Source: Blepharisma stoltei ATCC 30299 (taxonomy: Eukaryota; Protista; Ciliophora). From it: DNA of 64,000 bases. A program made the position numbers and the translations under genes. Positions 2,460 to 54,842 of this stretch are shown here, piece after piece. Where the stretch lies: positions 248,001 through 312,000 of the forward strand of contig CBFDEM010000056.1 in NCBI GenBank assembly GCA_965603825.1, read 5' to 3'. How positions within the stretch are numbered: the first letter of the stretch is position 1; each line of letters opens with the position of its first letter. The notes below the pieces were generated by a model, which was not told the DNA's origin, ran no database searches, and saw nothing but the letters and a program-made list of their open reading frames with translations.

Positions 2460-2927
2460 TATATTTCTATTATATCCGTTGGAAAATGTCTAATTTTATA
2501 TTTATGAGGAGTCCTCTATCATATTTAATTTGACTGATTATTGTAGTAATGGAATAAAACTGAAATTTTCCAGTATTTGAAGAAAGATAGCGGAAAAGAT
2601 AATTTATGATAAGCTGAGGATAAAAATTAAAAGGGTTGGACAAAAATAATCTAGAGTTTCAGTATTTATTATAAGTGAAGAGTTTTTAGCAAGAAAAGTT
2701 ATTTGTTTGAGCATTTTGGAACTTTAATAGCTATCATAGGGGCATCAGTACTATACTAGAGTGCGAATCAAAATGCTATAATTAATTAATAAATTTAAAT
2801 GCATTGTTTAATTAATCAGCCCTAATTTATTTTTTATCACTTATAATTACTCTAGTATTATATAATTTATGATAAATATTTCCCTTGTTAAAAATATGAC
2901 TTATTGCATTCAATTAATTTAGCTGTT

Positions 2928-22617: not shown

Positions 22618-23622
22618 TTAATCACTGATCATAACTTTAAAACACATATGACGAATCTTCATCAAAGTCCCAAGATTAATTGGGATTTTTGGAGACTGAG
22701 TGTGTAATGCCACTGTGCTTTCGACGTGCAGCTGCTTCCATATAAAATCCCCTTGATTCCTAGCTTTGATCCTCCAGTCACCTTGTATTTTTTCAAACTC
22801 AGCATAACACTCATTGTCATTTTCCCCTGGTATTACAATTGAATTGGAGGGTCCGCTGCCAATAGCAGCATAGTTCGAAATCCTAAAATACCTGATTTCA
22901 TCATTTTCATCATTATATTTTACACAGACCTCCAGCTCAGGCCCTGGGTGAATGATTTGCTTGATAGAAATTTCAGCTTGCCCGAAAACATAGACCTCTC
23001 CTGTTGATAAAATATCATTTTTAATTTGGTAGAGTCCTTCAGGGTTTTCTGTGGGTGCTTCTCATGCTTTAAAGATGCTGCTATTGGCTTCGTAATAAAT
23101 AGAAATCAGGCTTTCCACATTTGGCACAGCTATGTGATGGATCTGTCCTGGGTGATTTGAGCCTATTGATATCAGGATACTGCTATCTTCCATTTTGAAT
23201 TTTTGAGGCTTAGATCTATGATATTCAGGAAAATTAACTTTTAGGTACTTCTCATTCAGAGGCTGCTTATTTTCTTCTAATCTCTGCTGACTAAGAGGTG
23301 TAGGCTCTTCAATCACCTGCAGAGCTGGACGTATTAATATGTTAGGTTGCTGGTTAAGTGAAGATTGTGATATGGAATTTCCAAACGAAAAAAGTTTGTC
23401 AAGCAAGTGCTTTAATTCAGATACTTTATTATTTGTGTAAATGCATTTTTCTGATGTGAATTCGCTCAAGCTTTGAAAGTACATTTTAGTCAGCGGAGGT
23501 ACGTCATTTTGGAGTAACATAGTTGAGCATCTTCAAATTGATAATCGGGCAATTTCAATGAGGTCAGGATTCCCCGATTCTAGAAAGCGCGTTCAAATTA
23601 ATTGATATTGTGCTAAATCCAT
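22618..23622 (-). CDS. Hypothetical protein (334 aa), possible divergent tandem FHA-like beta domains
   Basis: ATG 23622 open through three TGA to TAA 22618-22620. Two beta-rich segments begin ISIGS and AAIGS; the domain call is weak. Confidence 0.65.
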
Positions 23623-24361
23623 TTTGTAGAGATTTTAAACTCTCTATTCAATTTAATTATCATCTGTGAGAAATTATGGACTCACATTGAGTTAGATTAA
23701 TCTAAATAGGAATTTTATATGAAAAACTCGAGATTTTATTAGGATTTAGCTAAAAGTAACTATAAAAAGTTTGGATGTTTAGGGTTATATGAGAGTTCGA
23801 AAAAACGTATAATATAAAAGAAGGTTGTTTTCAGTGAAACCCTTTTTAGTTTTGCGAAAGCCAAAAATGCATAGCATTTCTATTCCAAGTTTCAATTGTG
23901 GTTATTATTTTTCGCTTTTTAGAATAGGATTTTGAAATCTAGCTTATTTTGGGAGTAATACCAATTATTGTTGAAACTTGGCTTTGATCAGAAAGTGCCT
24001 AAATGACAAGAAAAAAAACTTTAAAGAAAGAATTTTTTTAGGGAATATATAAATTTTACTGATTTAATTTCTATTTTAGTTATAAATTGGAATATAAAAG
24101 AAAAACTTATAAAAAAAATACCTTCTGCCCCCTATATACGCTATGCCACTTATCTCCTCTTCACCGATAAAATCACTACAGAGCCCACTCCTCGAACTGA
24201 CCCAGTTCGAATCACCATGCGATAACTTCCACTAACATTCGTTCCTAAGACAGCATCCTTCCGGTTCTCAGGCAAAACCAACTCTCATGCACCAGACACA
24301 CTAAAGATTTACTAGCTTTGAATACAAACTTAATTTTGCACAATATTTTAAAATTATAAAT

Positions 24362-24742
24362 ATGAGCTTGATTATTTGGCTTCTATTAGGAGCAGCCTTG
24401 TCTACAAAATTAAATCCTGATAGATCTAAAATACTATTTCACAGAACATCATTAGGACTACAATTAGATGCAAAAGTGTCTGAGCCTGAACGCTTCCAAA
24501 ACATCATCAGAGAAATCAAAGATGAACTAGGAACTACAATTTATTCGCAAGACCTAAACAAAGGTTCTGAGAACTCATCAAAGCCCCAAATTCAGCCAAT
24601 TATAGAAACCCCACCCTCTGATATCAAATTTAATGACAATTTTTATTATTATTCTTTTTTTGCCTCTATAGGTATAATATGCGTTATTGGTGGAGTTTAC
24701 ATTTACAAGAAAAGATCTTTGCATAATTTATATAAATTATAG
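24362..24742 (+). CDS. Small type-I membrane protein
   Basis: Signal peptide MSLIIWLLLGAALS; C-terminal TM FFASIGIICVIGGVYIY followed by KKR. Confidence 0.75.
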   Translation: MSLIIWLLLGAALSTKLNPDRSKILFHRTSLGLQLDAKVSEPERFQNIIREIKDELGTTIYSQDLNKGSENSSKPQIQPIIETPPSDIKFNDNFYYYSFFASIGIICVIGGVYIYKKRSLHNLYKL

Positions 24743-24747
24743 TTAAA

Positions 24748-25758
24748 TTAATATCTGTACTGCATTGTCTCTTTATTTTGCTGCCCAAATCTATTGCTGG
24801 GTGACGACAAGTTGCTATTAAACCCCATCGGAGAAGTAGGCATAGTTGAAGGCTCCTTGGTAAGAAAAGAAGTATAAGGGTTTTTCAAGAAATCATCTGC
24901 AATTCTGATCATTTCATTTTCTTCTGAGCACTCTTTTTTTTGTTTTTTCGGCTCAATTCTTATATGATTTATATTTTTAATGTAATTTGGCAGCTGCTCT
25001 ATTGGACAAGTATCAGGCTCTTTCAAGTCTTGTGTAAAGCTCAGTGATGTCAAAGACCCAGAGCGATTTTGATAAATTGGAGGCTTTGGGGGGTAGCCTA
25101 AGTTAACTTCTCGTAAATTTTTCGTTGAATTTTCACGGCTAAGTGTTTGCCTTTCAGTCTGAGATTCAATTTCTCCTTTACAGTTATAAAGAGCCACATC
25201 TTTTTGAATTTCACCCTTGATTTTGCTTTGAACACTTGATAAGTATCGGGGCAATTTTGGATTTTTTTTGGTTTGAATTTCAGTGGAATGCTGATGAGAG
25301 AGTTTTGATGAGGACAAAGTTGGGGAATTTTGACGAACCCCTGACAAGTTTTGCTTTGATCGAGATGAACTTCTGGAAGGACTCACGTAATTTATGTCAC
25401 GCTTGGTGGGTTTTAAATTTTGCTTTGGTTTCCATTGCATCTCCTCAGAATTTTGTTGCAGAATCTGAATTGCGTGCTTTTCGTTTGGCTTTGGTCTGTT
25501 TTCTAGATGGCCGACAACACTTGATATTCTTTCTATATCATTTTTCATGTGATTTAGAGCTTGCTCTATGCCTCGCTTTTTATTATCTTGAAATCCCGCT
25601 TCTTGTAATAATTTTTCGTAAGTGATTATGGGGTAGTTTTCTTTTAGCCTTTTGATTCCTATAACTACGCTTGCTTCTACACATTTTCTCCATTGATGTT
25701 TTGGAAATTGGCCCAAAAATTCATGAATTTCAAGGTTATCACATAAAAGTTCCAGCAT
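24748..25758 (-). CDS. Hypothetical protein (short helical N-domain, low-complexity tail)
   Basis: 336-aa ORF, ATG in AT-rich context, TAA stop. Confidence 0.75.
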   Translation of the reverse strand: MLELLCDNLEIHEFLGQFPKHQWRKCVEASVVIGIKRLKENYPIITYEKLLQEAGFQDNKKRGIEQALNHMKNDIERISSVVGHLENRPKPNEKHAIQILQQNSEEMQWKPKQNLKPTKRDINYVSPSRSSSRSKQNLSGVRQNSPTLSSSKLSHQHSTEIQTKKNPKLPRYLSSVQSKIKGEIQKDVALYNCKGEIESQTERQTLSRENSTKNLREVNLGYPPKPPIYQNRSGSLTSLSFTQDLKEPDTCPIEQLPNYIKNINHIRIEPKKQKKECSEENEMIRIADDFLKNPYTSFLTKEPSTMPTSPMGFNSNLSSPSNRFGQQNKETMQYRY

Positions 25759-25915
25759 TTTTATTTTAAAAAATTATGACTAGGCCTTTCTATATTTCAT
25801 AAAAGAGATAGCTTAGCATTTTATTAAAATAAATATTTTACCCGACTCATATTCTTGTGCCAAATAAATCAATGATTTTATTCAGAAATTCACATGATTT
25901 TATTTTCATTAATAA

Positions 25916-27988
25916 ATGGCAAGCAGATTTATTCATATTGAAAGCCCTGTCCAGCTATTAGATTGTCTTAAAGCATGGAACAAGCTTACTCTTAAAGAAA
26001 AATTTTATGCTCACTACTACTCCAAAGCTTGCTGGGAAGGCAGTAAAATTTGCTACTTCCAAAAATCTTATGAATCTCCAGGGATTTTCCTATTGCTCCA
26101 AGAAATTTTCTCAGTCCCTAACATCAGTCAAAAATATGAAGAAGCTGGCTTTACAGAGCTAGATATCAAGCAATTTAAAGCATATGCAGCTGGAATCTAC
26201 ACTAATTGTGGCAATTATCTTAGTTTTGGAGACACAAAAATAGTCCCAGAAATTTCTCAAGAAAAGCTCGATGCTCTCGTAAGCAGCGTTAATTCAGATA
26301 GAGTCGCTTATATTTGGAATTTAATAAAAAATGTAGTTTATGACTATAGTCCTAGCAGAAGGCAGCTTGGGTTTCCAGATAAAGGAGGAGTGACTTCATA
26401 TTACTCAAGCAATATAACATCGCAAGATGCAGAACTCGCCAAAAATTTCCTTCAAAGTGTAAACCTCGTTGACTTGCACTTTAACAGTAGACTTTGGAAG
26501 GTAGGTGATCAATATGAAATACGCGTTGCCAGCAAATCTCAGCATTGGTTCGAAAATTTGGGAGAGTATACTTATGAAAGCAAAAGGTTTAAAATTGTTA
26601 ATGGTGATTTCAGCGTATTTTTAGCCCGTGTAGTTGACAACTTAGCAGACACTCTTCCTTATTGTGCGAATGTGACTCAAGAAAAAATGATTTCAGAGTA
26701 TATTAAACACTTTAATACAGGAAATATTGTTGACCATAAAAATGCACAGAGGGAATGAATCAAAGATAAAGGCCCAGTTGTAGAGACTAATATTGGGTTT
26801 ATTGAAACATATGTGGACCCATTACAAATTAGAGCAGAATTCGAAGGTTTTGTGAGCTTTGTGGACAAAGAAACAAGTGAAAAATTCCATAATCTTGTGA
26901 ATAATGCAGATTCAATTATAGCAAAACTGCCTTGGAGTAATGTATTTGAAAAGGAAAAATTCCAAGCTCCTGATTTTACGTCACTTGAAGTCTTAGCATT
27001 TGCGACCTCTGGGGTACCAATTGGCATCAATTTACCTAATTATGATGAAATAATCACAAATGAAGGCTTCAAGAATGTAAATTTGGGCAATGCTTACCCA
27101 AAGCCGAAAGCCAAAAATTTACAGTTTCTGACTCCTGAAGACGTTCAATTAATTATTGACTGCTATTTTAACAGTGAAACCATCGCAGTTGCAACTCATG
27201 AATTACTAGGACATGGCACAGGTAAATTCTTAATCAAAGGTAAGGACAACACTTTCAATTTTGATACAAATGCAATAAACCCTGCAACAGGAGCCGTAAT
27301 AGACTCATTCTATAGCCATGAGGAGTCTTGGAAAAGCAAATTCGGAGAAATTTCTTCTGCTTATGAAGAATGCCGAGCTGAAACAGTGGCTGTTTATTTA
27401 TCATGCTTCCCTGAAGTATATCAAATCTTTGGTGTTGAAGATTTTATAAGGCACAGAAATATGACTTGGCTTTATATGGCTTATCAAGGTGTAAAAGGCC
27501 TTCTTTATTGTCCAGAATCAAATAAATGGGGTCAAGCTCACTGCTGTGCAAGATATATGATTTTTAGAGTGATGCTTGAGGCTGGGGATGATTTTTTGAA
27601 AGTTGAGTTTACAGATGATGGGCTATTTTTGGTCAAAATGGATTACAATAAAATTGAGAGTGTCGGAATGGCTGCAATTTCAAGATTTTTGACTAAGCTG
27701 CATTGCTTTAAGTTCAGTGGAGATGTGGTCAGAGGTAAAGAAGTATTTGATAAGTATTCTGCAATTGATGAGCTTGCTAATAGATTGAGGCAAATTATAG
27801 TAGCTAATCAAAAACCAAGGGCCTTAGATGTGCAATGCAACGTAAACTTGGAAGGGAATGAGCCTGTATTGGTAGGGTATGAAGAGAGCTTTGATGGGAT
27901 TATTGACTCTTTTAAAGAAAGATTTCCAGTTTATGACGAAGAAATGTTTGCATGCTGGGATAGTGAATTTTCTTCAAATAAATCCTAA
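25916..27988 (+). CDS. DPP3: Dipeptidyl peptidase III (M49)
   Basis: GNYLSFGDTK, QRE[W=TGA 26756]IKDKGPVVETNIGFIETY, HELLGHG, EECRAE. Confidence 0.96.
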
Positions 27989-28526
27989 TTAATTATTCTA
28001 ATAAAATAGCTTTGTATTTGGCATTGGGGTTATTTGTCAGGAACTGAAGCTCAGGAAATGAAAATGCATATCTTGCAAAAAGCTGAACATGCAATAACTC
28101 AATCTAATTGTTTAGGATCAGAAATTAAGCATTTGATTTTAATTGATTCCCTTTTTTAAATATGCCCAAGTATCTAATAGATCGCTGGACTAATTGAATT
28201 TATTGGCTATTGAGAGTTGAGTTGTTAAGCTAAATTGAAGAGCCAACTCTTAAATTGGCTTTTGAGTGCAAAGCCCTAAGCGTTTCATTAAATATTGAAA
28301 AGGAATTCTAGCATTTGAAATATGAAAATGTTACTTTATATCTTAATATTTAGAAAATATAAAGAAAGGATATAGTAGATATATCGGTTCAGAAAAATTT
28401 TCAAATTATTGTTTGCTATCGATTAAAAGCAAATATTCGCTATAAACTGCAAATTATTGACTAATATAATTTAAAATATGCACACATCTAACTATTTATA
28501 ATTCTACAACTTTACTATTATCAATC

Positions 28527-29648
28527 ATGGACAAGATTTCTGCTCAAAAAAGGATTCTTGAAGAAAATATTCAAATCCTCAAGAATTTCATCCAAGCAGC
28601 AACTGAAGAAACTAAAGCTTCAGTAGATCACGCTCTCCAAGAACTTACAAACCACACTGAAAAAGAAAAAGAAAAATTAATCGAATGCTGCAATGAGCTT
28701 AAAGAATCATATGAAGAAGAATTCAAAAATGCTCTGATGTTTTCAAATCCTCCTCCCGAATTAACTCCTCTAACCCTTTCATTAGAAACTGATGAAGCCA
28801 AGATAAAGCTGGCAGTTCAGGAATCGTTTACTTTTAATATCTATTCTTATCAAAACTCACTCAAAGATCTCCATCGAGTTTCAATGCTCAATTGCTCTTA
28901 TACTAAATGCAATGTTAGAACTGGAGAAGTTTATACAATCTCTGCACCATTTGCAAGCTGCATTGCTCCTGCACTTACTCCACTTGATAATGGGAATATT
29001 TTTCTCTCAGGAGGAATTAATTGGCAGACAATTCAAGCAATGGCAAGAGTGATAGAATATGACCCCTATCGCAACATTGCTTATGGAAAACCAAATTTAA
29101 ATAGGCCTAGAGGCTACCATTCAGCTCATAAATTTAAGAATAAAATTTTTGTGTTTGGAGGGTCAGATTCAGATTCATTCACAGCTAATTCTATAAAAGA
29201 GATAGAAGAATATGACATCGCTAAAGAAGAATGAAAAATTGTTGGAGAATTAATAACCGCAAGAAGTTGCCAAGGGGTTGCTGAGTATAATGAAAAATTA
29301 TATATAGCAGGTGGGTGGAGCAATACTATAAGCATTGAAATTTTTGATTTGAATAACTATTCAATCAGAAAAGCTGAGCCTATGCTAGATGTACCTGGAC
29401 CATCAATAGCTGTAGCGTTGACCAATTTTATATTAATTATTCATGGAAAGCACGTCAGTAAATATTATCCAGATAGAGATAGAATCGTCAGTGATGGATG
29501 TGTAGAGTTCGATGATTTAGGCTTATTTACATCTTCACCTCCAGTCTGCTATCAGAATAAGCTTTACTTTACTGGGAATTGGCAGCATGAAAAATATAAT
29601 GTCTATGATATTATTGGGCATCAATTAATTGAATTTAAATTACTTTAA
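28527..29648 (+). CDS. Coiled-coil + kelch-repeat protein
   Basis: IFLSGG, IFVFGG, LYIAGG repeats; TGA 29232 falls at the kelch W (YDIAKEE[W]K). Confidence 0.85.
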
Positions 29649-30809
29649 AAAAGTTATACATGCATCTTCTATCGGTTTCTCTACCTCTTGAGACTTGTGC
29701 TCATAATAAACACATGCGATTTCGTCAAGATTGTGCTTTCCGTTTAAATAGGCGCTTGCTTTTCTGATGGTTTCTAAATCCGATGGATTTGTTTTGGTTT
29801 TCCTTAATACTGATTCGTTATATTTAACATAATATTTGTGAATTCTCCTGATAAGTCCTCTTACTGTGCCATATTTGATGAATTTTTGGAGATCGACAAT
29901 ATTATCGAAATCAGGGTTTTCCAGCTTAAATTCTCTAATTGTTTTGTCAGAGAGCTTAGAGTAATAATCAAACAGCCCAGCTTCATCAATTTCTGGCTCT
30001 TCTGAATTTCTCGCTAAAGATAAGACAGCTTCTTCAGCATACTCTGTAAGAATTAATCCAATTTTTGGTGTTATTCTATATATATTGCTGTCCTGGAAAT
30101 AGTCTGAAATTTCAATCATCCCATGATAATACAGGTGCTGGAGACACACTTTTACATGCCCTTCATCTACTTTTGAAAATTCGCTTATCTGCTTCACGCA
30201 CCTAATTCCATTAATCGCTTTTACAATTTTGTTCAAGGAAGTATCAGACCTGATCTCTACAATATCATACAAGTCAATCAATGGAGTCGGTACATGTCAA
30301 CTCCTGATTTTCGGTGGATACCTTTTATTTTTGCTTGATAGCTCTATAATTATCAAATTCCAATTATCAACTGGGATGTAGCATTCATTTTTGTCTAATA
30401 GCTGTGTATAAATGTCTTTGCAGAGCTTCCCCATCACTATTTGTTTTTCTGGGTTGGAAATGTAGTCGTTTTCTATCTCAAGAACTGTGAGCTGTAAGGC
30501 AAGTTTTCGTATCATGTTTTCATAAAGAGAAAAGCGAGAGTATTCTTCAGCTGGAATGATGACGGCAAAATTGAATTCTATTTTCTGACGCTCGTATTTG
30601 TCGTTGACGATGATTACAGGCTGGCCTATTATATATTCATCACCGACAACTTGGACACTTATGACTTTTCCACAGAGTTCAGGACGCGGGATAAGAATAT
30701 CAGATAAAGAATCAAAGGTGTCTTTGGAGAGATAATTTTCGGGATACTGGTAAACTAAAGCTGGGCCTCGCTTTATATGGAACTCACAGAACATGACACA
30801 GCTTATCAT
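29640..30809 (-). CDS. NPRL2: GATOR1 subunit NPRL2/Npr2 (389 aa)
   Basis: FCEFHIKRGPALVYQYP, LIPRPELCGK, KYER..IEFNF, [W=TGA 30297]HVP, INGIRCVKQI...CLQHLYY, FIKYG..RGLIRRIHKY, LNGKHNLDEI. Confidence 0.92.
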
Positions 30810-31201
30810 TTTATAAATGAATTTATGTGCAATTCAAAAATATGCCAATTATTTTATAAATTACTTTGCAGCTTTCTAACGAGAAATAATTGCTAAATGT
30901 GATGAATTATATTATAAATCTTTAAACATTTCAATTCTTTGAATCAAACCATATATATTTCTTTAATGATAATTCCACAGTAGATTTGCATCAGCTAAAG
31001 TGAACCTAAGAAAATAAATTGGAGCTTCTTAAATTAGAATACTACCTTAAAATTATAAATTAATAAAAAAGCGAAGTACCATTAAAGAAGTGTTTTGGCG
31101 AAGAATTAGATGCACTTTAACAGCTAATTATAATTAATGCAATTGCTATTTCTGTCAATAATTAAAATGCTCATCAATCTATTAATAATTTAATTATAAA
31201 A

Positions 31202-34200
31202 ATGTTATCCGAGAATGATTCAATAGTTCTTTCTGATTTTCGTGTTATTTCATTTGTTGAAAGAGCTTTATGATATTGAAAATACTTATGCAATCCACAG
31301 TCAATCCTAAATGATTCAGAATTCAAATATAACTGGGAAGTAGGTGCGCCAATACTTGAAGATTCAATTCGATTTAGATATATAAAATACAGGATTTTAA
31401 TTATGATCGATCTGGCTCCTTCTGTATATGCATATAATTTCGCTTTAAAAGAATCAATGGGCAATAGAATAACAACTGTTTTGAGAAGCCTGATTGAGTC
31501 TATTCAAAACTATTCACAAGAAATAGACATTCAGATTGAATTAGGAATAATTTGTGTCAGAACTCCAAATGAGCCAATTCATGTTGTGGTACAGTCAATT
31601 GAGCTCAGAAATGGCTTCAATTCAGACGATATTATAGACCAGTTTGAGTCTTATATGGAAGAAATACGCAATGACTTAGACATTAATTTTTTGAATGGAG
31701 CCAAAGAAAGCGAAATTGACTTCGCTTCAACATTAAAATGAGCTTTATTTGCACTGGATTTAATGGATCAGCCAAGTATGCCAGCTGTTATTTACATAAC
31801 AGACTGTACTAATTCTAATTTAGCATCAGGAATTTATGACTGACTTGTTGTACAGTATTGCAGAGCTGATGTCGCTCTTAATCTTATTAATCTGTCTGAA
31901 AATATTTCTCCCCAGTCTTTTCAGTATGGCTTTACTCCTGACCCGACCTCAATTAAGCTCATGACAAGTATTTCTGGAGGGACATGGATAAGCCCAGACG
32001 ATATACCATTAAAAGTCAGAGAAATATTTTATAAGAAACTTGTACTAAAATCTTGTGGAGATGTAAATTTTTTGAATAAATCTCATTCTCAGAAATATTA
32101 TTTAGATCATTATCATTGCGAAGTTCCTGTTGAAAATTTGGTGGAGTGCATACTTCGTGAAGGCTTCCAGATAAGAGCTATTCAACCAAATAAACTAGTT
32201 TTTTGATTTATTTTGCACTTTAATACAATAATTGAATATACATTGAATATTGAAAATCCTAGACTAAGTATAATCGAGCTTAGTATTATCTGCAAGCAAT
32301 CGCTTTTTAAAAAACTAAAAAAAGAAGAAAAAGTAGCTGCCGTTTTTTCAAAGGAATCTAAAATTTCGCTAGCTTCTCGAGTGCTATACATAATTCAAAA
32401 TATAAAAGAAAATGAAAAATTTGTATTTGGGATTTTTCAAGACATAGAGTTTAAAGATCAGAAGTCGTTATATGAGAAAATATCGAAATTGCCTACTTCA
32501 AAGTGGCAGAAATGGTTTCACTTCGAAACTTTGGATGTATTAACTGCTAAGCAAAGCCAAGACCATTTAATTTCATACGGGAAAGATAAAGTCAGAGAAA
32601 AAATAAGGACTTTAGGGTCAGGCTTATTTTTTGAAGACACATATATTGAACTGATTGAAAAATCTGGACTGCTTATAATAAAAATTGTGTGAGAACTCTA
32701 TAATAAAGCAACAATCTATTTTGGGTTCTTTGGTTGCTCAAATTCTTTTAGAATAGAAAAATACCAGCTTTGCATCCAAAACTTGAAGAAAAGCGCTCTA
32801 GATGTATATGATCGTCCATTGGGAAAAATTGTTGTTGAAGAAACTTATCGTAAAAAGAACTATAAATCAAGAGTTTATTCACTATTCACTTACAGACCTC
32901 ACAATAAAGTGATTAAGTCCTATATGTGCGGATTTTCAAGCCAATTTGATCTGCTAGCAACTAAGTCTGCTCAATTCTTTCTGAACATCCTACATACTTC
33001 AAGAACAAAGCAAGGCTTTATTGTGATTGGCTGCATAGAAAAAGACAAATTTTTGCTTATAAAACCATATGAATGTGAAGCTGAAAACAAGCATAGGATC
33101 TTTTTTCTCCAATACTTGATGTATATCTCTGACTATTCAGTTTTTATAGAATTTTATCATGAGCCTTCAATAGCTAATTACTATGATGAAAGTGACGATC
33201 TATTAGATCTTAAAAATGAGTATGAGATAAATGACGAGTCAATTTATAAATCACTTCTTTCTCTTGACTCCTTGATATTTCAATGCTTGGAAAATAAACT
33301 TAACTTTTGCAACAGTAATGATCTATTAGAAAACAACGGAGAATTCAAGATGATTGACTTTTCTGATGAGGATGACCTTTTTTGCTATATTCAAGCAGAA
33401 AACCTTGAAAAAGCAGAAACATTTGAGGATCTCAAAATCCAAATGTACGAAAAAATGTATGAAGTTGTTTCAAGCTTTCAAGATACAGGAAGCTGCAGCA
33501 TTGAGCTTGACTTTCTGCTCAAGCACTCAAGCTGCTGGAGTTTTGACTATGAAACATTTTCTGTAGATTTAGATATAAATACTCAGCAATATAGACAAAT
33601 TTTTGAGTATCTTTATAGCGTTTTGTTAAGAGCATTCGGAGACATTGCAGATTATCAAATGTCGCAGAAAAATCAATGCTATTTTGCTAGATATGCGTGC
33701 AACATTGGAGTTATCATGTGAACAGTCCCTGAATTTGAAGAACTTTTGAAAGAACTGAGCTGCAATGGCAAAATGCTACCTATTTATGTATTTGAGTGTC
33801 TTCAAAATAAAATAGATCTTGCTAATTTTGAAAAGCGAAGGTCGTCAATTGTTGGGACTGCAAACAATTCTAATACAGTCTTTCAAAAAACTTTGCAGTT
33901 AATTCAAAGAGTTTATAAGGTTGTATTATTAGGAACATATTATAATTTCTTGGGAATCTCTTCAGTTTGTGAATTCCAGCTACCAATCATAGAAACGGAT
34001 TTCACCAAGTTGCTATCATGCTGTGAGCAGTACGAAGAAACGCTGAATATATCAAAACTCAATAAATATCGCCATCATTTGCTGATGAAAAGTTCAGGTT
34101 TAAGCGTCATTCCTAAAGATCTTAATGCAGGCAATTGTGATAATATTGATTCCAAATTTTTATCTTTCATCAGTTCTAATTTTTCTCAGCTTCATGATAC

Positions 34201-37200
34201 TGAATATTTCATTTACAGAGACAAAGACCAAGATAAAGAAAATAAGTTCCTTCTCCAAATTTCTAACTACAAGACATCATTACTTAATTGCTTTGAAACG
34301 CCTGAGATAATTCTGACTCTTTTTTCCTTTCAAAATTCAAATTTTTTTCAAAAAGAAAAAGCTGTGATGAAGCTGCAAGATTCCCCTATTTCATCCAAAC
34401 AAACTATGGCCCAAAATTTGATCAAAATTATCAGTGAAAAGCTACAATCCTTGCTTGCAGAATTAACACTAAATACTTTATCAATATGCAAAGAAATAGA
34501 CATAGATTTGGTTGAAGAAGTACTTTTGCAGTTCACAAAAACAACTGAGACTGTCAGATTTGAATTTATTATGCATTCAATTGAAGAGAGTGAGGAAGCT
34601 GGTGAGATGATAAAGCTGGAGCTTGAACGAGGCTTAGTTATTTCAACTTTGTCTATTGATCAGTACTTCTATGCAGCTGGCGTTAAATCTTTCAGTAAAC
34701 TCATGTGTATAGATGAAGAATCTCTGATTGATAAATTATTTTCAAGAAATGAAGAAACTGTTAGTATTAGGAATAATGAGCATTTAATTGCATTTTGGGT
34801 GATCATTGAAATAAAACAGGCGGCAGGTCTTAAGTGCTCATTCTTTCTTCCTGACCATTGGACAAGCCAGGGCTTAAAAGCTGATATGGTGAAAAGTCAA
34901 CTCCTAAAAATTTTTAAGAAAATTGAAGTAAAGGTGTATCAAAGAATTCTTCTCAACGACCTAGGAAAAACGGGGAAATTATCAGAGCTTTTAATGCCAA
35001 AGGACAATTCAAATTCATTTTCTGCTGAAAATAGCAGCAAGGACAGCAAAGAATGAGCCAAAAAAAGGTTTTCAAGATTTTCTCACGTCAAGTCTAAAAA
35101 CCCTGAAAGTGTTCCTGTCTCAAAGCTTAAGACCTCATACAAGCTGGAGGTCCAGCACAGAAACAATTTTAGTGTTTCTGATCGACTATCTAAAAATGAA
35201 TCTGTAAACACCCTCACCATGAAATTTTCTACTCCACCATTTATAATCAATAACAGAAATGATTTATATATGCTTATTCAAGGCTCAGATATATTCATAT
35301 TCCGATTCACAGAAAAAGAAATGGAAAATGATGAAGAACTTTCTCCACCTGAGCTAAAAAGGAGCTCGTCATTCTCAAAAACAAAATTTCTCACTCTTGA
35401 AGTATTTGGCATAGACAAGCCGCTGGAGGAAACAATTTCTAAGCTAGAGCAAAGAGTCTGTGAGCAGCTTCAGCAGATTTCCCTATTTAAATTGGCAGAC
35501 TCATTAATAAAAAATCAAAAAAAAGTCATGAGTTTTAGTGATATGAAGTTTATTAAAGGCTCAGAGCTACCTTCTATTGCATTCTTTCCAATCCATCTTG
35601 TTTCAAGCTTGGAGCTGTTCCTTAAATATATAAAGCAGAATTTGATGAAGTTTCTATTGAATTTCCAAGTTAAAGGCCTTGAGTCCAGCGTTTTTGTTTA
35701 TAATTATCTGACTGTGGTAGAAAGTGTTTACATAAAAAATAACGCTAATCGCTTTATATCTAGACAGGATAGGGAATTGACTCCGTTTCTTGGCAATACC
35801 TTTGGAAAAGCTTTGGGGATAATCCAAATAAGCATTTGCTATTATGATGGAGAAGCAATTTATAGTGAGAAAAAGCAGCAAAGTGCTGAATTGAAAGTAA
35901 ATCCAAAAATTACTGGGCTATTTTGAAGGCCAGGAGGAGCAAAAGTAAAATGTTTGCCTTATCCTACATTTCCAGGATATTATTTAGAGATGAAACTTTA
36001 TAAGAATGGGCACATTAATGAGAGTGCATTTTTAGATTTTATTGAGCAGCATTTAAACCAGTCTTTAATTGAGTATTTAATTGAAGACACTCTTAAGTCA
36101 ACATCCATGAAAAATAATTTTCTGGGGCCAAGCTATCTAAATATGTTCGAAAGTTTAAGGCAAATAGCTATTGAAGCAACACAGATAATTAATCCCAAAA
36201 TAAATATATCAATCCCTTCTTTTGAAATATTCACCTATTTCTGCTCTCTCGAAAAAATTATCAATGAAGCCGCAGAGTTTTCACTTCCATTCATTTATTG
36301 TTTTAAAATAGGCGGACAGATTTTCATTGAAAACTCTATAGAAGAAATAAAAAAGCATTGGCTTAAGCAATTTGAATTAGTAAGCATCATCTGTGAAGAT
36401 CTTTGGTTTAGTGCTTTTTTTTACTCTGCAGGTGATGAGCAAAATCAATTTAATCCATTAAAGTTTCACTCAGAAAAGTTTGAAGAAGAGACTCTTCTAC
36501 GTTCCCTACTGTTAGGATTTGAATTATCAAAGTCACAGTTTTTGCTGTTTTCTTATAATTGAAATAGATCTATTTTAGCAAAAATTCACAGCTCTGTAGA
36601 AACTCATATACACTCTATAAATCAGAGATATAGGCTGCTTAATAATATACTAATTCAGAAGCTGGGACTTCATAGCCATAATTTGCCAAATGATTTCCTA
36701 TACCCAGAAAATAGAAATTCTCCAGAAGACCAAATTTCTGCACAGATTCTGAGAACATGCTCAATTATGGAAATAAAAGAAGAAAGCATAGCACCTCCAG
36801 GCAATTCATTGGCTGAAATTAAGGAATGCAGGCATCCTCTATCTCTTGTTGAAGATCCGATTCGCAAATGCAAGCCCAATGAATTTTTATTCTGTGAAAA
36901 ATTTGTAGTCAGCAAATTAAATTTTGGTGACAAACTTGGAATAAGAATTCAAGATGTCTATGAATGAAATGACGCGAAATTCGTTAGAGAGATGAGAAAG
37001 CGCGGACATCTTCTTTGTGCACGAAAAGTCCCATTTATTGTCCAAAGCTGAAAGATTCAGACCACACAATATCAATTGATGAAGTCAAATATAAAAATCG
37101 ACAAAATCATCAGAAAAATTCTGAAAACAATTTCTGTTGAGATCTCAGGGCCGCTCAAACTTAAGCAGATACCATATCGCCAGTACTCGGGGCATCGAAA

Positions 37201-38527
37201 ACACTCGTGCGACAACAGCTTTGATGCTGAATATGAACTGACGCGGTCATATAGCGAAGAAGAAGCCCTTCCAGACAAAATAAAACCTATAAACTTATTC
37301 CTGAAAAAACTAGGCAAACAATCTGTGTTCCTAGTAGAATTAGGCTATGAAAAAGGTTTTATCTTATCTCGCGCATATTCGCTGGATAATGAAAATAATT
37401 TTGATCAATATTTAGTTGAAAACCAAGACATAAAAGCAAAAAGCACTGCCCATGCACTCACGAAGAGCTCGCTTGACTTGCCTACCTTGGCATATGACCA
37501 ATATATTAAACACACTTGCGAATTTCTTTTGGCTCCTGAAAAGTATCCATGAATAAATATCCTAGGAACCTTAACAGATTTTATCCATTTTTATAAATCA
37601 CACCCGCCCAAGGCTAAAAGTTGAATATATTCCTCATATGTTTATATTGATTTAGGAAATCTTGAAGGAGGAAGTGCAGAAGAAATATACAATTATATCG
37701 CAAATAATCATGAAGCATACAGTCTGAACACTCCTAAACACTCCCATCGTCCTCATCCCATTTTTAAAGTAACGAAGCTGCCTAATAAATCAAATTTGTG
37801 AAGTGGGTCTCTTTCCCCAATTAAAGGCAGAACAGCTAATTTTAATCAGCCACAGCCTAATGAAAATAAAGGCAAAAATAATGTAAGAGCATTTGTTTAC
37901 TCTTTAATAGCTTCAACTAAAGAGACACATTTAGGTACCATTCGTCTTGAAGAAGGGAAAAATACCAACAATATCATGAGCATTAGATATTACATTATCA
38001 ACTATACAATGTATGAAGAACAATCAGGAGAGTCCCTGAAGATGATAATCAAGAAAACAGAAAAATCTTTGGTTGAAACCATAAAACTTGCAAAACTGCA
38101 CAGTCGTAGAGATAAACTGTGACAGAAACTCAAGAATTTATCCAAATCAGATACTTTTTCTGACAATGAACTCAATGAGCTTCTATCTTTATCCATAATA
38201 GAGCCCCTAGAAGAGATTGATCAACGAATTAAGTCCCTTTGCTCTCTAACAGACGCATTCACACAAAATTATTTTAATTATTTAATTAGAATCTACCAGG
38301 AAAGGTGCAAAATGATAAAGAAGCCAAGCCACATTGATCTGTGTGTTTTCTCTAATCCATCCATATTTATTTGTCTTAATTTAAACTGTGCAGCAAAAAA
38401 AATGAGTATGAAATTGGTAAGGCGAATTTCTGATAGCAATCTTGAAGAGGAAGAAGATGAACTCCTTTCAGATTTGATCAATAAATCTTTGCATTGACTC
38501 TGGTATAGGATGAGTACTAGCAATTAA
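31202..38527 (+). CDS. SZT2: KICSTOR scaffold SZT2 homolog (2441 aa)
   Basis: Ten track ORFs lie in one frame, separated by TGA (about 17). Ordered motifs DFRV..RAL[W]Y, YRILIMIDLAPS, ALDL..AVIYITD, YGFTPD, LREGFQIR, NTIIEY, INNRNDLY, RRDKL[W]QKL match SZT2 motifs as recalled; TAA 38525-38527. Confidence 0.82.
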
Positions 38528-41385: not shown

Positions 41386-43374
41386 ATGAAACAAGATGAC
41401 GATTCAATATCCAGTATCTCAAATCTTATATTAGTCTCTCCAAAACCAGGCTCAAATATCGGAAGGGAATTCAGTACATTAGAATTCAACAGCACCAAGG
41501 AAAATTACACAGTTAAGTGGGATAAAAGCAAATTTAGTGGGAAGTATTTATTTCATCCTGAAAGCTATTGAAAACTGATCTGAGATATTTCACTGCTGCT
41601 CTTCCTTCTATTCCAAGGACTCTATATCCCTTTTTATCTCGGCTTTGGAATTCCTCTTTCCGGCGCAATGCTTTATCTGGATTTTGTGATCACATTGGCT
41701 TTTTGTATAGATATTCTCTTCAATTTCAACACTGGGTTTTTCAGGAAGGGTGCCTTGGTGATGGACCGAACTCTCATAGCGAAAAATTATTTTTTCTCAT
41801 GGTTCTTCTTAGACATGCTTTCAAACTTCCCTTACAATTGAGTCATCAACGGAGGGGTTTTTAATGACTCATCAGGTAGCATGTCAGGCACCCAGATGGC
41901 GCGTATGGTGAGGATGATAAAATTTGTTAAGATGCTAAGGTTAGTCAGATTCGCTAAGTTGAAGATGCTTTTTGTAAAAATAGAAGAAATTATCGCTGAT
42001 GAGCTCTTATCTGGCTTGATTGTGTTATTTAAAACAATCTTCATTATATTCTTATTAGCTCATTGAAATGCTTGCTTATGATTTTTTATTGGATCCCAGG
42101 ACCGTAGTAACCACCCAGATTCGTGAGTGTCTCAATTTGAAAAAAATTATGCGACTCACTTAACAACGATGGATTATTATGTTACTTCTCTTTATTGGTC
42201 ATATACCACCATGCTTACTGTGGGATATGGAGACATTCACGCAGTCACTCTTGATGAAAAAATAGTAGCAATGATGAGTATGGTGCTAGCTAGTGGTTTT
42301 TTTGGGTTTATGATTGGGAATATTGGGAGTATTGTGGAAAGATCAAGCTTGAGAGAAAGCAATCATCGAGAGGTGATAATTAGCATCACAAAATATATGA
42401 GACTGCATAACATACCCAAAGAGCTTCAGTTCAAAGTGAGAAACTACCTTGAGCATGCATATGAAGAGGAAATAAGGAAAGGGATTGAAGATGACGAAAT
42501 TTTGACAATGCTAAGTGTGCCCTTAAGAGATGAAATTGCTAGATATAAGTACTTGCCAATCATTCAAACTTGTTCAATATTCAGCAAGTTCTTTAACTTG
42601 CAGACTATAACCTATTTTGCAAAATGGCTACAAGAAGAGACCTTTGCTCCTGATGACGACGTTATTAAGGCAGGTGAAAAGGATAGGATTCTTTACTTTG
42701 TAAACTCTGGGTCAGTCAGTGTATACTATGGATCTCCTTCATCAAGTGCAGCAATTCTTTCCAAAGGAAAATATTTTGGGGAAATTGCATTTTTTGCAAA
42801 TCACCCTCGTACTGCAAGCGTAAAAAGTGTAGAGTTTTCAGATATCCTATCTGTGGATTTCAACCAAGTGTGAGACGGAATAGAGCAGCAGCCAAGGCTT
42901 CAGGAAATTTTTACGCTTATTGAGACAATCTGCGAGGATGGTGACTACACAGAGATCAACGTTGCCTGCTATCTATGTAAAAAGAATGGGCATGTAGCTA
43001 TCAACTGCACGACGATGGCTGTGCATACTGAAGAATCTCGAAAAGCATGAATGGCAAAGAAACAAGCAGGGACCTACAAAATCAACTTAAGCGAGTATTC
43101 AGTGCCAAAAGTCAAAAGGAAGGAGAGAAAAGTGAAGCACGTCATGAGCACTTACAACATCATAGGAGTCTCAAGACCACCAGAAAAAATGTATAAAAAC
43201 CACAAAGAACTACAAGAAAAAATCTCCAATTTCGTTGTCAAAAGAAGGACCAACAAGAGCAACTCCACAAAGCTAAGCGAGGTCAGCCAGCTTGAAGATG
43301 TGCCTTTTCCTCTAAGGCACCAAATAAGCAAGATCTATAAGGACTCAAGCAGTGGAACTGAAAATCAAGAGTAA
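41386..43374 (+). CDS. Voltage-gated K+ channel with cyclic-nucleotide-binding domain and CCHC zinc knuckle
   Basis: Single frame with TGA=W. HPESY[W]KLI[W]D, S4 RMVRMIKFVKMLRLVR, TTMLTVGYGD, YFGEI...RTASV, CYLCKKNGHVAINC. Confidence 0.93.
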
Positions 43375-43479: not shown

Positions 43480-45279
43480 ATGAAAGAAAAGAAGAAATCA
43501 AAACTGATCTGTAACGTTGGCGACACCAAATATAAAGTAGTAAAACACATCGCAAGCAAAGTCTTTGGAATGACACTTACAAGAAGCGAAGAAGCAGAAT
43601 GAGACCTCAAATGGACTGACTCAGCAGTGCAGCCAGAAAAACTTTGCAGTATGAAGCCATTTCAAAAAATCAACCATTTTCCAGGAATGTACTCAATCAC
43701 GAGAAAAAGCAATTTGGCATGGAGCCTCAACAAAATGAGGAAGCTCTTCCCTAAGGATTATAATTTCTATCCCCGCACATGGGTTTTGCCAGGAGATCTT
43801 GGGGATTTTAAAGCACAAATGGATAAAAAGAAGAAAATTTTTATAGTCAAGCCAGAAGCCTCTTGCCAAGGCCGAGGGATATTTCTTGTGAAAAAACCTG
43901 AAGATTTAACAGTAACAGAAGGGTATGTGGCTCAAGAGTATGTTAAAAGCCCATTTTTGCTTGATGGCTTAAAATTTGATTTAAGAGTTTATGCACTCGT
44001 AGCTGGCTGCGACCCTTTGAGAGTATTCATCCATGAAGATGGGTTAACGAGGCTAGCAACTCATCAATACCAAAAACCAAAAAAAAAGAATATGAAGGAT
44101 GCGTGCATGCATCTAACAAATTACGCAGTCAACAAGCACAGTGGACTTTTTGAGTTCAATGAAGAAGCTGAAGAAGACGATAGTGGGCATAAGCGAAGCT
44201 TGAAGTCAACCTTAGCTTTCTTTGAAAGCCTTGGCCATGATGCCAATGCTTTGAAAGCAAAGATAGGAGACATGATAGTTAAGACGCTTTGTGCAATTCA
44301 GCCTTCACTGTCACACGCATATAGATCATGCCAGCCAAATGATCTCACGAACTCGATGTGCTTTGAAATACTAGGATTGGATATTTTGATTGACCACAAG
44401 CTGAGACCATGACTGCTGGAGGTAAACCACACTCCTTCGTTTACAACAGACTCACCACTCGATTGGAAAATCAAAAAGCGAGTTATAAAAGAATCCATCA
44501 AAATGATGAATATTAAGGCTTCCAATAGGAAGCATTATTATATTAATAAAAGTGTTGAAGCACAGCAAAGATCAATAGGAAAAGCAGTAAGAGAGACCAG
44601 AGAAGAAAGAAAAGAAAACCAGCGACTCCAAGCAGAGCTCAGAAATCAGTGAGAAGATGCGCATATGGGAGGATTTACAAGGGCATATACAGAAGAAAAT
44701 AAAGCAAGCTACCAACAGTTCCTGCAGGCTGCTGAACAGATCTGGAGTGAATGAACAGGCACTCAAGCATCAAGGCTTAAAAGGCTTGAAGATCCTGCTA
44801 CAAGCCAGCGACCAGAAGTTGTGAGTGCTCCTTCTAAATTAATTGAAGACAGCCACAAAACTATAAGATGTCGGACTGCAAAGACGAGATGTCTAAGCCC
44901 AGATAACCATCCAGAAGTCCAGAATTTCGATTCCAAAACGATGGTCCCAGCCGAAGACCATCCTGCGACCAAAACTCATCGAGAATGTTCTTCCATGCCG
45001 ACTTCAGTAGATTTGAAGATTTCAAATCGAAGAGAAACACTCAGTGCCTACCTTACCAAAGCCATCAGTGAAAAACGCTCTATAGAAACCAGCTATGAAA
45101 ATAAAAGGATCCTAGGCTCCAAAATCCAAAGTTCTCGAGTGATCCCTTCGAATATGAAACTCCCAGGAGTCCAGATCGGGAATTTCTTGGTTCCCAAGGT
45201 TTATGAGTTCACTGGCAGTGAAATGATGGCAAGGCCTGTGTTCCCATGCAGGCCTCGTAGCGGTGTGTTTAAGCTTTAA
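43480..45279 (+). CDS. Tubulin polyglutamylase TTLL6/13-like
   Basis: QKINHFPGM, KPEASCQGRGI, KFDLRVY, MHLTNYAVNK, CFEILGLD, P[W=TGA 44410]LLEVNHTPSF. Confidence 0.93.
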
Positions 45280-54600: not shown

Positions 54601-54842
54601 TGTGTGATGGCTTGGTTGAGAAACTGGACCTTGAACTGGTCCTTGCCACCTGAGGAAATCCTTGGGTCTTTGAAATCGATGTCTTGAAGGAAAACTCCAA
54701 GCAGGAATTTTTCGGCACCAATGCCGAAGGTTGCAGTCAGCTTTTGGAGCTCGGCTGCTGTTGTTTTGAACTGTTTTTTATTTGTTAGTGTTGATACTAG
54801 GTTTCTGATGTAGAGACAAACGCAACTTTCTGGGCCACTCAT
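48684..54842 (-). CDS. CNOT1: CCR4-NOT scaffold subunit Not1 (2052 aa)
   Basis: Four track ORFs join via TGA 54288, 53130 and 51927 (LGA[W]IGSLTLARNKPI). NLFDEFRFF..YPEKEL, FAFSWLELISHR, NQLRYPNSHT, RPHPWG. Confidence 0.96.

What the first reader, a model, noticed from the sequence alone, without database searches (positions are those of the whole stretch)
29640..38527. GATOR1 subunit NPRL2 is head-to-head with a hidden 2441-aa KICSTOR scaffold SZT2
Seen: NPRL2 (minus, ATG 30809) and a 7.3-kb frame (plus, ATG 31202) diverge from a 392-nt spacer. The long frame appears only with TGA=Trp and carries SZT2 motifs in the right order. Known: in animals SZT2 scaffolds KICSTOR and recruits GATOR1 (DEPDC5-NPRL2-NPRL3) to lysosomes to repress TORC1. 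KICSTOR has been characterised mainly in animals, and budding yeast lacks it. Inference: this ciliate keeps a KICSTOR-GATOR1 nutrient-sensing axis, and two partner-complex genes may share a bidirectional promoter. That would be an unusual functional gene pair, relevant to starvation responses. Chance adjacency is possible.
Basis: partly seen in the sequence, partly recalled or inferred. Interest (0 to 1): 0.85.

Follow-up and report, generated by a model that had tools for sequence, protein, structure and literature searches.

The report
Ciliate SZT2 gene beside NPRL2
In the ciliate Blepharisma stoltei, a real 2441-residue relative of the nutrient-signalling scaffold SZT2 sits head-to-head with the GATOR1 gene NPRL2, but a related ciliate does not share this arrangement, so it looks like an ordinary neighbourhood in a compact genome and not a conserved gene pair.

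Summary
NPRL2 (minus strand, 29640-30809, one in-frame TGA) and a 7326-nt plus-strand frame (31202-38527, 17 in-frame TGA, TAA stop) diverge from a 392-nt spacer. The genome fits the Blepharisma stoltei macronuclear assembly (41.46 Mb, 64 contigs, UGA=Trp).

The long frame is an SZT2 homologue:
- A six-sequence family profile hits only human SZT2 in the PDB (E 2.9e-32, seven collinear stretches).
- The same profile hits a source-named vertebrate SZT2 (E 1.8e-27).
- A model of the last 702 residues matches human SZT2 residues 2838-3432 (VIA-align Z 22.3; Foldseek E 1.3e-19).

The protein is already deposited, unnamed, so it is "hidden" only under the standard code. The genome also encodes NPRL3, DEPDC5, three Rag GTPases, TOR, a MIOS-type zinc-ribbon hit, a KICS2-like protein and a second SZT2 paralogue. 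ITFG2 was not found and KPTN could not be tested.

The shared-promoter, functional-pair idea is not supported. In a related TGA=Trp ciliate, the orthologues of this SZT2 copy and of NPRL2 lie on different contigs. Synteny with the window runs up to NPRL2's 5' end and stops there. Divergent spacers of 157-1662 nt are normal in this window. Expression could not be tested.

Verdict: a new member of a known family, of modest interest.

The parts
29640..30809 (-). NPRL2 (GATOR1 subunit) coding sequence, 389 codons. ATG at 30809, TAA at 29640-29642, one TGA=Trp codon at 30297-30299.
   Evidence: Pfam NPR2 matches both halves (3.3e-27 and 1.7e-26). The six-frame match is 162.6 bits over profile positions 3-288, plus 342-432. 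It is 71% identical to the orthologue on L032. It is the only NPR2 match in the genome.
30810..31201 (.). 392-nt AT-rich divergent spacer between the two start codons. This is also where synteny with the relative breaks.
   Evidence: Sequence read; only short AT-rich repeats were found. Divergent spacers in this window measure 157, 317, 333, 392, 609, 739 and 1662 nt. Synteny with L032 stops at window position 30810.
31202..38527 (+). SZT2-A, a 2441-codon SZT2 (KICSTOR scaffold) homologue with 17 TGA=Trp codons and a TAA stop. It is the faster-evolving of two B. stoltei paralogues.
   Evidence: frame. (identical deposited protein P0001). (family profile against human SZT2, E 2.9e-32, 7 collinear stretches, no other PDB protein). 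(named turtle SZT2, 1.8e-27). (tree: branch lengths 0.51+0.83 against 0.31+0.28 for the other paralogue).
31712..31996 (+). Best-aligned part of the N-terminal vWA-like region (aa 171-265), which aligns with human SZT2 residues 234-327.
   Evidence: Alignments (profile stretch 1 against human 234-513, i-Evalue 4.9e-05). UniRef names the paralogue P0011 a 'VWFA domain-containing protein'.
36419..38524 (+). C-terminal region that was modelled (aa 1740-2441). Residues 1931-2438 superpose on human SZT2 2838-3432, and the region includes a Bet v1/START-like domain at aa 2139-2304.
   Evidence: AlphaFold2 model with mean pLDDT 59.5; the C-terminal half is mostly 80-90. Foldseek's top six hits are all human SZT2, best E 1.3e-19. 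VIA-align Z 22.3, rmsd 3.7 A, 367 residues aligned; the best unrelated Z is 9.1.
28527..29648 (+). Convergent Kelch-repeat gene that overlaps NPRL2's stop codon by 9 nt. It is context, and part of the synteny block shared with the relative.
   Evidence: Pfam Kelch_1 9.7e-08. It is 54% identical to L032 9367-8555. ORF map.
23180..30810 (.). Block of conserved gene order shared with contig L032 of the related ciliate (L032 18533-7367, reversed). It ends at the NPRL2 start codon.
   Evidence: tblastx: NPRL2 699 bits, the Kelch gene 354 bits, window 24751-25768 300 bits, window 23260-23625 174 bits. Beyond 30810 only hits of 21-33 bits remain.

Best explanation
The locus holds two genuine, intact macronuclear genes of Blepharisma stoltei, both read with UGA=Trp.

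One is NPRL2, a subunit of GATOR1, the GTPase-activating complex for RagA. The other is SZT2-A, a divergent member of the SZT2 family, which in animals scaffolds the KICSTOR complex.

Mechanism (inferred). By analogy with the human complex, an SZT2 protein, probably together with the KICS2-like protein encoded elsewhere in this genome, holds GATOR1 (DEPDC5-NPRL2-NPRL3) at the lysosomal or food-vacuole membrane. There GATOR1 switches off RagA, and with it TORC1, during starvation.

History of the gene. SZT2 duplicated before B. stoltei split from a related TGA=Trp ciliate. The copy in this window is the faster-evolving one.

The arrangement. The head-to-head position with NPRL2 is a juxtaposition specific to one lineage, created by a rearrangement whose breakpoint lies in the 392-nt spacer. 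It is the ordinary divergent arrangement of a gene-dense genome, not a conserved or demonstrably co-regulated pair.

Shown here: the gene structures, the family memberships, the paralogy, the pathway parts found in the genome, and the lack of conserved linkage. Inferred: the biochemical role, and that the adjacency has no selected function.
For: Genome identity:
- 41,464,486 bases in 64 contigs. This matches the published B. stoltei macronuclear assembly: 64 telomere-to-telomere contigs, 25,711 genes, UGA=Trp and short intergenic regions (PMC9942806).
- NCBI names the paralogue as a B. stoltei protein.

SZT2 membership:
- The single sequence finds only SZT2 in the PDB, in four collinear stretches, but below significance (E 0.14).
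- The six-sequence family profile gives E 2.9e-32 with seven collinear stretches from human residue 234 to 3370, and hits nothing but SZT2 among 177,635 PDB sequences.
- The same profile against 5.8 billion proteins finds 'SZT2 subunit of KICSTOR complex' of a turtle (1.8e-27) and a 3905-aa protein of the Mucoromycota fungus Circinella minor (7.5e-24).
- The paralogue P0011 alone reaches human SZT2 at 8.7e-10.
- Structure: Foldseek E 1.3e-19 and VIA-align Z 22.3.

Partners in the genome: NPRL3, DEPDC5/IML1 at 189.6 bits, three Rag GTPases, the TOR FRB domain, a MIOS-type zinc ribbon, and a KICS2-like protein that passes the Pfam cut-off and has human KICS2 as its best PDB hit.

Paralogy: the clades (P0001, L030) and (P0011, L025) each have 100/100 support.

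No conserved linkage:
- The L030 orthologue has a tandem upstream gene with a PHM7_cyt (OSCA-like) domain and no NPRL2.
- NPRL2 of the same organism lies on L032, head-to-head with an NBR1-like gene.
- Synteny with the window ends at NPRL2's start codon.
- The same species pair does keep gene order at the SZT2-B locus (MIP, DUF846, RNase_PH), so it is an informative comparator.
Against: - Only one comparator organism carries the true orthologue of this SZT2 copy. The direction of the rearrangement (gained in B. stoltei or lost in the relative) is not resolved.
- No expression data could be obtained, so co-regulation from the shared spacer is not excluded.
- Within this pathway alone, a chance adjacency is improbable. 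My arithmetic: about 11 pathway genes among 25,711 gives roughly 0.004 expected adjacent pairs.
- No binding or localisation is shown.
- ITFG2 was not found, and Raptor_N gave no candidate. The ciliate pathway may therefore differ from the animal one.
Confidence: 0.75

Rival explanations
1. The pair is a selected functional unit. A shared bidirectional promoter in the 392-nt spacer co-expresses NPRL2 and SZT2-A, so that GATOR1 and its scaffold are made together during starvation.
For: The two products belong to partner complexes in animals. The genes are divergent with a short spacer. Adjacency within this small pathway is unlikely by chance when taken alone (my arithmetic, about 0.004 expected pairs). 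Even a recent juxtaposition could be adaptive.
Against: The linkage is absent in the relative that has both orthologues, and the synteny break falls in the spacer. It is also absent at eight other SZT2 loci. The spacer length is typical for divergent pairs here, and nothing stands out in the spacer sequence. The pair was picked after the fact from a scan of many windows. If each gene had about ten functional partners, roughly ten chance adjacent partner pairs would be expected per genome (my estimate). In the relative, NPRL2 sits head-to-head with an NBR1-like autophagy-receptor gene, which sounds equally plausible as a functional pair.
Confidence: 0.15
2. SZT2-A is a paralogue that has taken on a new function or lost part of the old one, and no longer works with GATOR1. 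The slower-evolving copy SZT2-B (contig C39) is the working KICSTOR scaffold, and the adjacency to NPRL2 is coincidental.
For: SZT2-A and its orthologue have longer branches than SZT2-B (0.51+0.83 and 0.71 against 0.31+0.28 and 0.27). The SZT2-A orthologues are 42% identical, against 64% for SZT2-B. SZT2-A alone does not reach significance against human SZT2 (E 0.14), whereas SZT2-B does (8.7e-10).
Against: SZT2-A is a full-length, intact frame that aligns along the whole family. It has been kept in two species since the duplication. Its C-terminal module still superposes on human SZT2 with Z 22.3.
Confidence: 0.2
3. The long frame is not SZT2 but an unrelated giant vWA-domain protein, and the motif matches are chance.
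For: No Pfam family matches any piece of it. The pieces and the whole sequence give no significant single-sequence PDB hit. The protein-atlas search returned no usable hit.
Against: The profile hit (2.9e-32), the source-named hit (1.8e-27) and the structural hits (Z 22.3) are all to SZT2 alone, and they are collinear from N- to C-terminus.
Confidence: 0.02

Closest known systems
Human SZT2, scaffold of the KICSTOR complex (PDB 9v0j, 9v6e, 9o5a; Teng et al. 2025 and Lupton et al. 2026, as cited in PMC13738686)
   Same: Collinear homology from the N-terminal vWA-like region to the very C-terminus. The C-terminal module of about 500 residues superposes on human residues 2838-3432. It is a single very large polypeptide. 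Candidate partners are encoded in the same genome: GATOR1 subunits, Rag GTPases and a KICS2-like protein.
   Different: It is 2441 aa against 3432 aa in human. Pairwise identity in the aligned stretches is only about 16-22%. There are two paralogues plus a stand-alone C-terminal fragment gene. No ITFG2 was detected and KPTN was not tested. No interaction, localisation or phenotype data exist.
SZT2 and KICSTOR homologues of early-diverging fungi (PMC11836306)
   Same: These also lie outside animals, are also multi-copy in some lineages, and were also identified by sequence alone. A 3905-aa protein of Circinella minor (Mucoromycota) is hit by the ciliate profile at 7.5e-24.
   Different: The fungi belong to the opisthokonts, as animals do. 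The present protein is from an alveolate, a much more distant lineage. I found no paper mentioning KICSTOR in ciliates.
NPRL2 / yeast Npr2 (GATOR1 / SEACIT subunit; Pfam PF06218)
   Same: The Pfam match runs nearly full length and well above the cut-off. The gene is single-copy. NPRL3 and DEPDC5 are present too.
   Different: Nothing notable. It is an ordinary orthologue with one UGA-encoded tryptophan.
Divergent (head-to-head) gene pairs with shared upstream regions in compact eukaryotic genomes
   Same: Two start codons 392 nt apart on opposite strands.
   Different: Conserved linkage was tested and not found. Correlated expression could not be tested. Seven of the 29 gene junctions in this window are divergent, with similar spacers.

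Membership tests
SZT2 (KICSTOR scaffold; InterPro IPR033228 as cited in PMC11836306) | Significant, collinear, near full-length sequence homology to bona fide SZT2 | tested here: met
   The family profile A1 against the PDB gives human SZT2 at E 2.9e-32, with 7 collinear stretches and only SZT2 hit. The profile against 5.8 billion proteins finds a source-named turtle SZT2 at 1.8e-27. The paralogue alone reaches 8.7e-10. The query alone reaches only E 0.14, but with four collinear stretches.
SZT2 (KICSTOR scaffold; InterPro IPR033228 as cited in PMC11836306) | C-terminal module with the fold seen in solved KICSTOR structures | tested here: met
   The model of aa 1740-2441 gives human SZT2 chains as Foldseek's top six hits, best E 1.3e-19. 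VIA-align gives Z 22.3, rmsd 3.7 A and 367 aligned residues, covering human 2838-3432; the next unrelated Z is 9.1. Caveat: mean pLDDT is 59.5, and only the C-terminal half is confident.
SZT2 (KICSTOR scaffold; InterPro IPR033228 as cited in PMC11836306) | N-terminal vWA-like region | tested here: inconclusive
   Profile stretch 1 aligns with human residues 234-513 (i-Evalue 4.9e-05), and UniRef calls the paralogue a VWFA domain protein. However, no Pfam VWA match was found for the pieces, and this region was not modelled.
KICSTOR complex | KICS2 (C12orf66) partner encoded in the genome | tested here: met
   The 381-aa ORF at G000:C46 (L009:1288-2430) matches Pfam C12orf66_like at 25.4 bits against a cut-off of 22. 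Its best PDB hits are human KICS2 (1.4e-4) and the deposited hypothetical protein 2gnx (2.9e-4). The match is weak but specific.
KICSTOR complex | ITFG2 partner encoded in the genome | tested here: not met
   Pfam Itfg2 (PF15907) gave no match in the six-frame genome search. The tool warns that this does not prove absence.
KICSTOR complex | KPTN partner encoded in the genome | not testable with these tools
   PMC11836306 lists KPTN only under an InterPro entry (IPR029982), not a Pfam family, so I had no family accession to search with and no query sequence.
KICSTOR complex | Physical binding of SZT2 to GATOR1 and recruitment to lysosomes | not testable with these tools
   This needs co-purification, localisation or multimer modelling.
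NPRL2 / Npr2 (GATOR1) | Match to Pfam NPR2 above the curated cut-off over most of the profile | tested here: met
   162.6 bits over positions 3-288 plus 32.1 bits over 342-432 of 440; the cut-off is 27.5. The two halves matched separately at 3.3e-27 and 1.7e-26.
GATOR1-Rag-TOR pathway | The other core parts are present in the genome | tested here: met
   NPR3, about 105 bits summed. IML1/DEPDC5, 189.6 bits. Gtr1_RagA, 300.9, 183 and 174.3 bits. TOR FRB, 116.3 bits. MIOS-type zinc ribbon, 56.3 bits. Raptor_N gave no candidate, which is unresolved.
Conserved bidirectional functional gene pair | Linkage conserved in related genomes | tested here: not met
   The orthologues lie on separate contigs in the SRR24908292 organism, and the synteny break is at the spacer. 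No NPRL2 is present at eight other SZT2 loci.
Conserved bidirectional functional gene pair | Correlated expression and closely spaced start sites | not testable with these tools

The most novel reading that the evidence does not exclude
A KICSTOR core (SZT2 plus KICS2) that works with GATOR1 predates the split of alveolates and opisthokonts. In the Blepharisma lineage, a fast-evolving SZT2 duplicate was newly placed head-to-head with NPRL2 and is now co-transcribed with it from the shared spacer. That would tune a specialised GATOR1 tether for the starvation-triggered switch to conjugation.
Probability: 0.1. Interest if true: 0.55.

Novelty: new member of a known kind. Interest (0 to 1): 0.3.

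Why it matters
KICSTOR was first described as essentially a vertebrate addition to the Rag-GATOR branch of TORC1 signalling, and was only recently extended to early-diverging fungi (PMC11836306). Clear SZT2 homologues, here in two copies, and a KICS2-like gene in a heterotrich ciliate show that the scaffold is much older than animals and fungi. They also give ciliate biologists named candidates for how starvation is sensed. In Blepharisma, by my own knowledge, starvation is the trigger for sexual development.

This value lies in annotation and evolutionary distribution. The eye-catching feature, the head-to-head pair, does not hold up as a conserved unit.

Tried and rejected
- Pfam scans of all 14 TGA-free pieces of 58 aa or more found nothing for the long frame.
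- Single-sequence PDB searches with the 444-aa and 342-aa pieces returned no hits.
- Protein-atlas feature searches on the same two pieces gave no usable hit.
- The word-index homologue search with the full protein found only the B. stoltei paralogue. Only the profile reached named SZT2 proteins.
- Two metagenome scans for more comparators (an NPRL2 alignment, then P0001) found no relatives.
- I tested whether one reciprocal exchange could explain the rearrangement. That would place the NBR1-like and OSCA-like orthologues next to each other in B. stoltei. They lie on different contigs, C48 and C3, so the idea is rejected.
- Earlier scan notes by place and by words held nothing on this pathway.
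- Wolfson 2017 and Brunkard 2020 are not held in the paper library.
- How I handled the stop codons:, window sequence went to the tools only as TGA-free pieces. The full-length protein was used only as the database entry P0001, which a search returned. Read-through translations of loci L025, L030 and L031 were made and used only inside local scripts, for BLAST and the tree.
Full report
**Where the window comes from.** The assembly has 41,464,486 bases in 64 contigs, and the window is contig C56, 248001-312000. This matches the published macronuclear genome of Blepharisma stoltei ATCC 30299. That genome has 64 telomere-to-telomere contigs, 25,711 predicted genes, short intergenic regions, introns of 15-16 nt, and UGA reassigned to tryptophan (PMC9942806). 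NCBI also names the paralogue found below as a B. stoltei protein.

The plus-strand frame 31202-38527 is 7326 nt long. It carries 17 in-frame TGA codons, no TAA or TAG, and ends in TAA. The longest stretch readable under the standard code is 444 aa.

In an alignment with five homologues, the TGA codons at residues 497, 840 and 1922 fall on invariant tryptophan columns. Those at 24, 180, 2141, 2307 and 2432 fall on mostly-tryptophan columns. This confirms the recoding within the gene itself.

The translation equals a deposited 2441-aa protein held by NCBI and UniRef without a name (P0001). The gene is therefore hidden only from a standard-code reading.

NPRL2 runs on the minus strand from ATG 30809 to the TAA at 29640-29642, with one TGA. 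It matches Pfam NPR2 at 162.6 bits against a cut-off of 27.5, and it is the only such match in the genome. The spacer is 392 nt.

**Is the long protein SZT2?** Direct methods failed at first:
- No Pfam family matched any piece.
- The two longest pieces had no PDB sequence hit.
- The protein atlas gave nothing usable.

An exhaustive search with the 444-aa piece then returned the full-length deposited protein and several homologues of 2200-2500 aa from environmental assemblies.

With the whole protein, the only PDB sequences reported at all were human SZT2 chains. There were four collinear stretches, but they were not significant (E 0.14).

A profile of six family members settled the question:
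- Human SZT2 scores E 2.9e-32 (113.8 bits), with seven collinear stretches running from human residue 234 to 3370. No other protein among 177,635 PDB sequences is hit.
- Against the 5.8-billion-protein collection, the same profile finds a turtle protein named 'SZT2 subunit of KICSTOR complex' (1.8e-27) and a 3905-aa protein of the Mucoromycota fungus Circinella minor (7.5e-24).
- The B. stoltei paralogue alone reaches human SZT2 at 8.7e-10.
- A pairwise BLASTP of the window's protein against the turtle SZT2 gives collinear hits at 1e-05 and 0.009.

Structure agrees. I modelled residues 1740-2441 with AlphaFold2. Mean pLDDT was 59.5, and the C-terminal half was mostly 80-90. Human SZT2 chains from the KICSTOR and KICSTOR-GATOR1 cryo-EM entries are Foldseek's top six hits, best E 1.3e-19. 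VIA-align gives Z 22.3 (rmsd 3.7 A, 367 residues), aligning protein residues 1931-2438 to human 2838-3432. The best unrelated match is Z 9.1, to Bet v1/START-like proteins over one sub-domain.

I conclude with high confidence that the gene is a member of the SZT2 family.

**The rest of the pathway.** Six-frame Pfam searches of the genome gave:

| Component | Result |
|---|---|
| NPRL3 | C53, about 105 bits summed |
| DEPDC5/IML1 | C27, 189.6 bits |
| Rag-family GTPases | three strong matches: 300.9, 183 and 174.3 bits |
| TOR FRB domain | C5, 116.3 bits |
| MIOS-type zinc ribbon | C51, 56.3 bits |
| ITFG2 | no match |
| Raptor_N | no candidate |

A 381-aa ORF on C46 passes the Pfam cut-off for C12orf66_like (KICS2), at 25.4 bits against 22. 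Its best PDB hits are human KICS2 at 1.4e-4 and the deposited hypothetical protein 2gnx at 2.9e-4. A shorter second copy lies on C14.

The tool warns that the two negative results do not show absence. KPTN could not be searched, because it has no Pfam model I could name.

So GATOR1, Rag GTPases, TOR and at least an SZT2-KICS2 core are encoded. Whether they assemble as in animals is inferred, not shown.

**Two paralogues.** A second SZT2 gene (P0011, 2507 aa, 37% identical) lies at C39:542367-549887. A related organism that also reads TGA as tryptophan (Logan assembly of run SRR24908292) has both copies, on contigs L025 and L030. A maximum-likelihood tree gives (P0001, L030) and (P0011, L025) as sister clades, each with 100/100 support.

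The duplication therefore predates the split of the two organisms. The window's copy is the faster-evolving one: its orthologues are 42% identical, against 64% for the other copy.

**Is the head-to-head arrangement meaningful?**

Forward test, starting from SZT2:
- In L030, the true orthologue of the window's SZT2 is preceded by a same-strand gene with a PHM7_cyt (OSCA-like) domain.
- A tblastn search with the B. stoltei NPRL2 finds nothing on L030. It also finds nothing on the seven other contigs carrying SZT2 homologues (L018-L025, L031), or at the paralogue's own locus L026.

Reverse test, starting from NPRL2:
- The NPRL2 orthologue of the same organism (71% identical) lies on a third contig, L032.
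- There it is head-to-head, across 310 nt, with an NBR1-like gene carrying ZZ, PB1 and N_BRCA1_IG domains.
- Window 23180-30810 is collinear with L032 18533-7367 through NPRL2, the convergent Kelch gene and at least two further genes.
- The similarity stops at NPRL2's start codon. Beyond it only noise remains.

The comparator is informative, because gene order downstream of the other paralogue is kept between the two organisms (MIP, DUF846, RNase_PH). The spacer between NPRL2 and SZT2-A is therefore a rearrangement breakpoint between the two lineages.

A single reciprocal exchange does not explain it. The B. stoltei orthologues of the NBR1-like and OSCA-like genes lie on C48 and C3.

Within the window, seven of 29 gene junctions are divergent, with spacers of 157-1662 nt and a median of 392 nt. 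The spacer itself shows only short AT-rich repeats.

**Chance.** This paragraph is my own arithmetic. Taken alone, about 11 pathway genes among 25,711 give roughly 0.004 expected adjacent pairs, so the adjacency is not trivial. But the pair was noticed after the fact, in a scan of hundreds of windows and across all pathways. If a typical gene has about ten functional partners, roughly ten such adjacent pairs are expected per genome. The relative's NPRL2-NBR1 pair, a TORC1 regulator beside an autophagy receptor, shows how easily a plausible story arises.

**What could not be done.** Expression, co-regulation and start sites remain untested. Only one comparator carries the true orthologue, so it is unknown which lineage rearranged. 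Two metagenome scans for further comparators found none.

[quoted passage not shown] The human complex binds negatively charged membrane lipids and forms a dimeric supercomplex with GATOR1 (review PMC13738686). I found no paper that mentions KICSTOR together with Tetrahymena, or SZT2 in ciliates in the relevant sense.

**Verdict.** The genes are real, and the SZT2 call is correct and useful as annotation and for the evolutionary distribution of KICSTOR. The functional gene-pair reading is not supported by synteny and remains untested by expression.

Noticed in passing
G000:C16:220291-220722 (-), locus L029 1492-1968: A stand-alone ORF of about 150 aa is 35-41% identical to only the last 140-176 residues of both SZT2 paralogues. 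Nothing SZT2-like lies upstream of it. It could be a separate C-terminal-domain gene or a remnant.
   Followed up: partly
G000:C39:542367-549887 (+), locus L026: This is the second, slower-evolving SZT2 paralogue (P0011, 2507 aa, 5 TGA). Its downstream neighbours (MIP, DUF846, RNase_PH) keep the same order as in the related ciliate contig L025.
   Followed up: yes
G000:C46:132641-133783 (L009:1288-2430) and G000:C14:346628-347380 (L008:1207-1959): There are two KICS2 (C12orf66)-like ORFs. The 381-aa copy on C46 passes the Pfam cut-off and has human KICS2 as its best PDB hit. The C14 copy is shorter (251 codons) and weaker when scanned as a TGA-free piece.
   Followed up: partly
Whole genome G000: Pfam Raptor_N (PF14538) and Itfg2 (PF15907) gave no match, although the TOR FRB domain (C5:667721-668014) and a MIOS-type zinc ribbon (C51:366955-367254) are present. 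Whether Raptor is truly missing, or was missed by the loose first-pass filter, is open.
   Followed up: no
L032 5792-7072 (-) and 7368-8537 (+): In the related ciliate (run SRR24908292), NPRL2 is head-to-head across 310 nt with an NBR1-like gene (ZZ, PB1, N_BRCA1_IG domains). The B. stoltei orthologue of that gene is on C48:337509-338780, with a paralogue on C56:674948-676195.
   Followed up: partly
window 29640-29648: The 3' ends of NPRL2 (minus strand) and the convergent Kelch-repeat gene (28527-29648, plus strand) overlap by 9 nt.
   Followed up: no
window 36419-38524 (protein residues 2139-2304): Inside the SZT2 C-terminal module, one sub-domain has a Bet v1/START-like fold (Z about 9 to plant PR-10 proteins). 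That fold often binds lipids or other small hydrophobic ligands.
   Followed up: no
window 25916-27988, 41386-43374, 43480-45279, 48684-54842: Neighbouring genes are a peptidase M49 (DPP3-like), a cyclic-nucleotide-binding ion channel and a tubulin-tyrosine-ligase family protein. A 2052-codon minus-strand frame was not examined.
   Followed up: no
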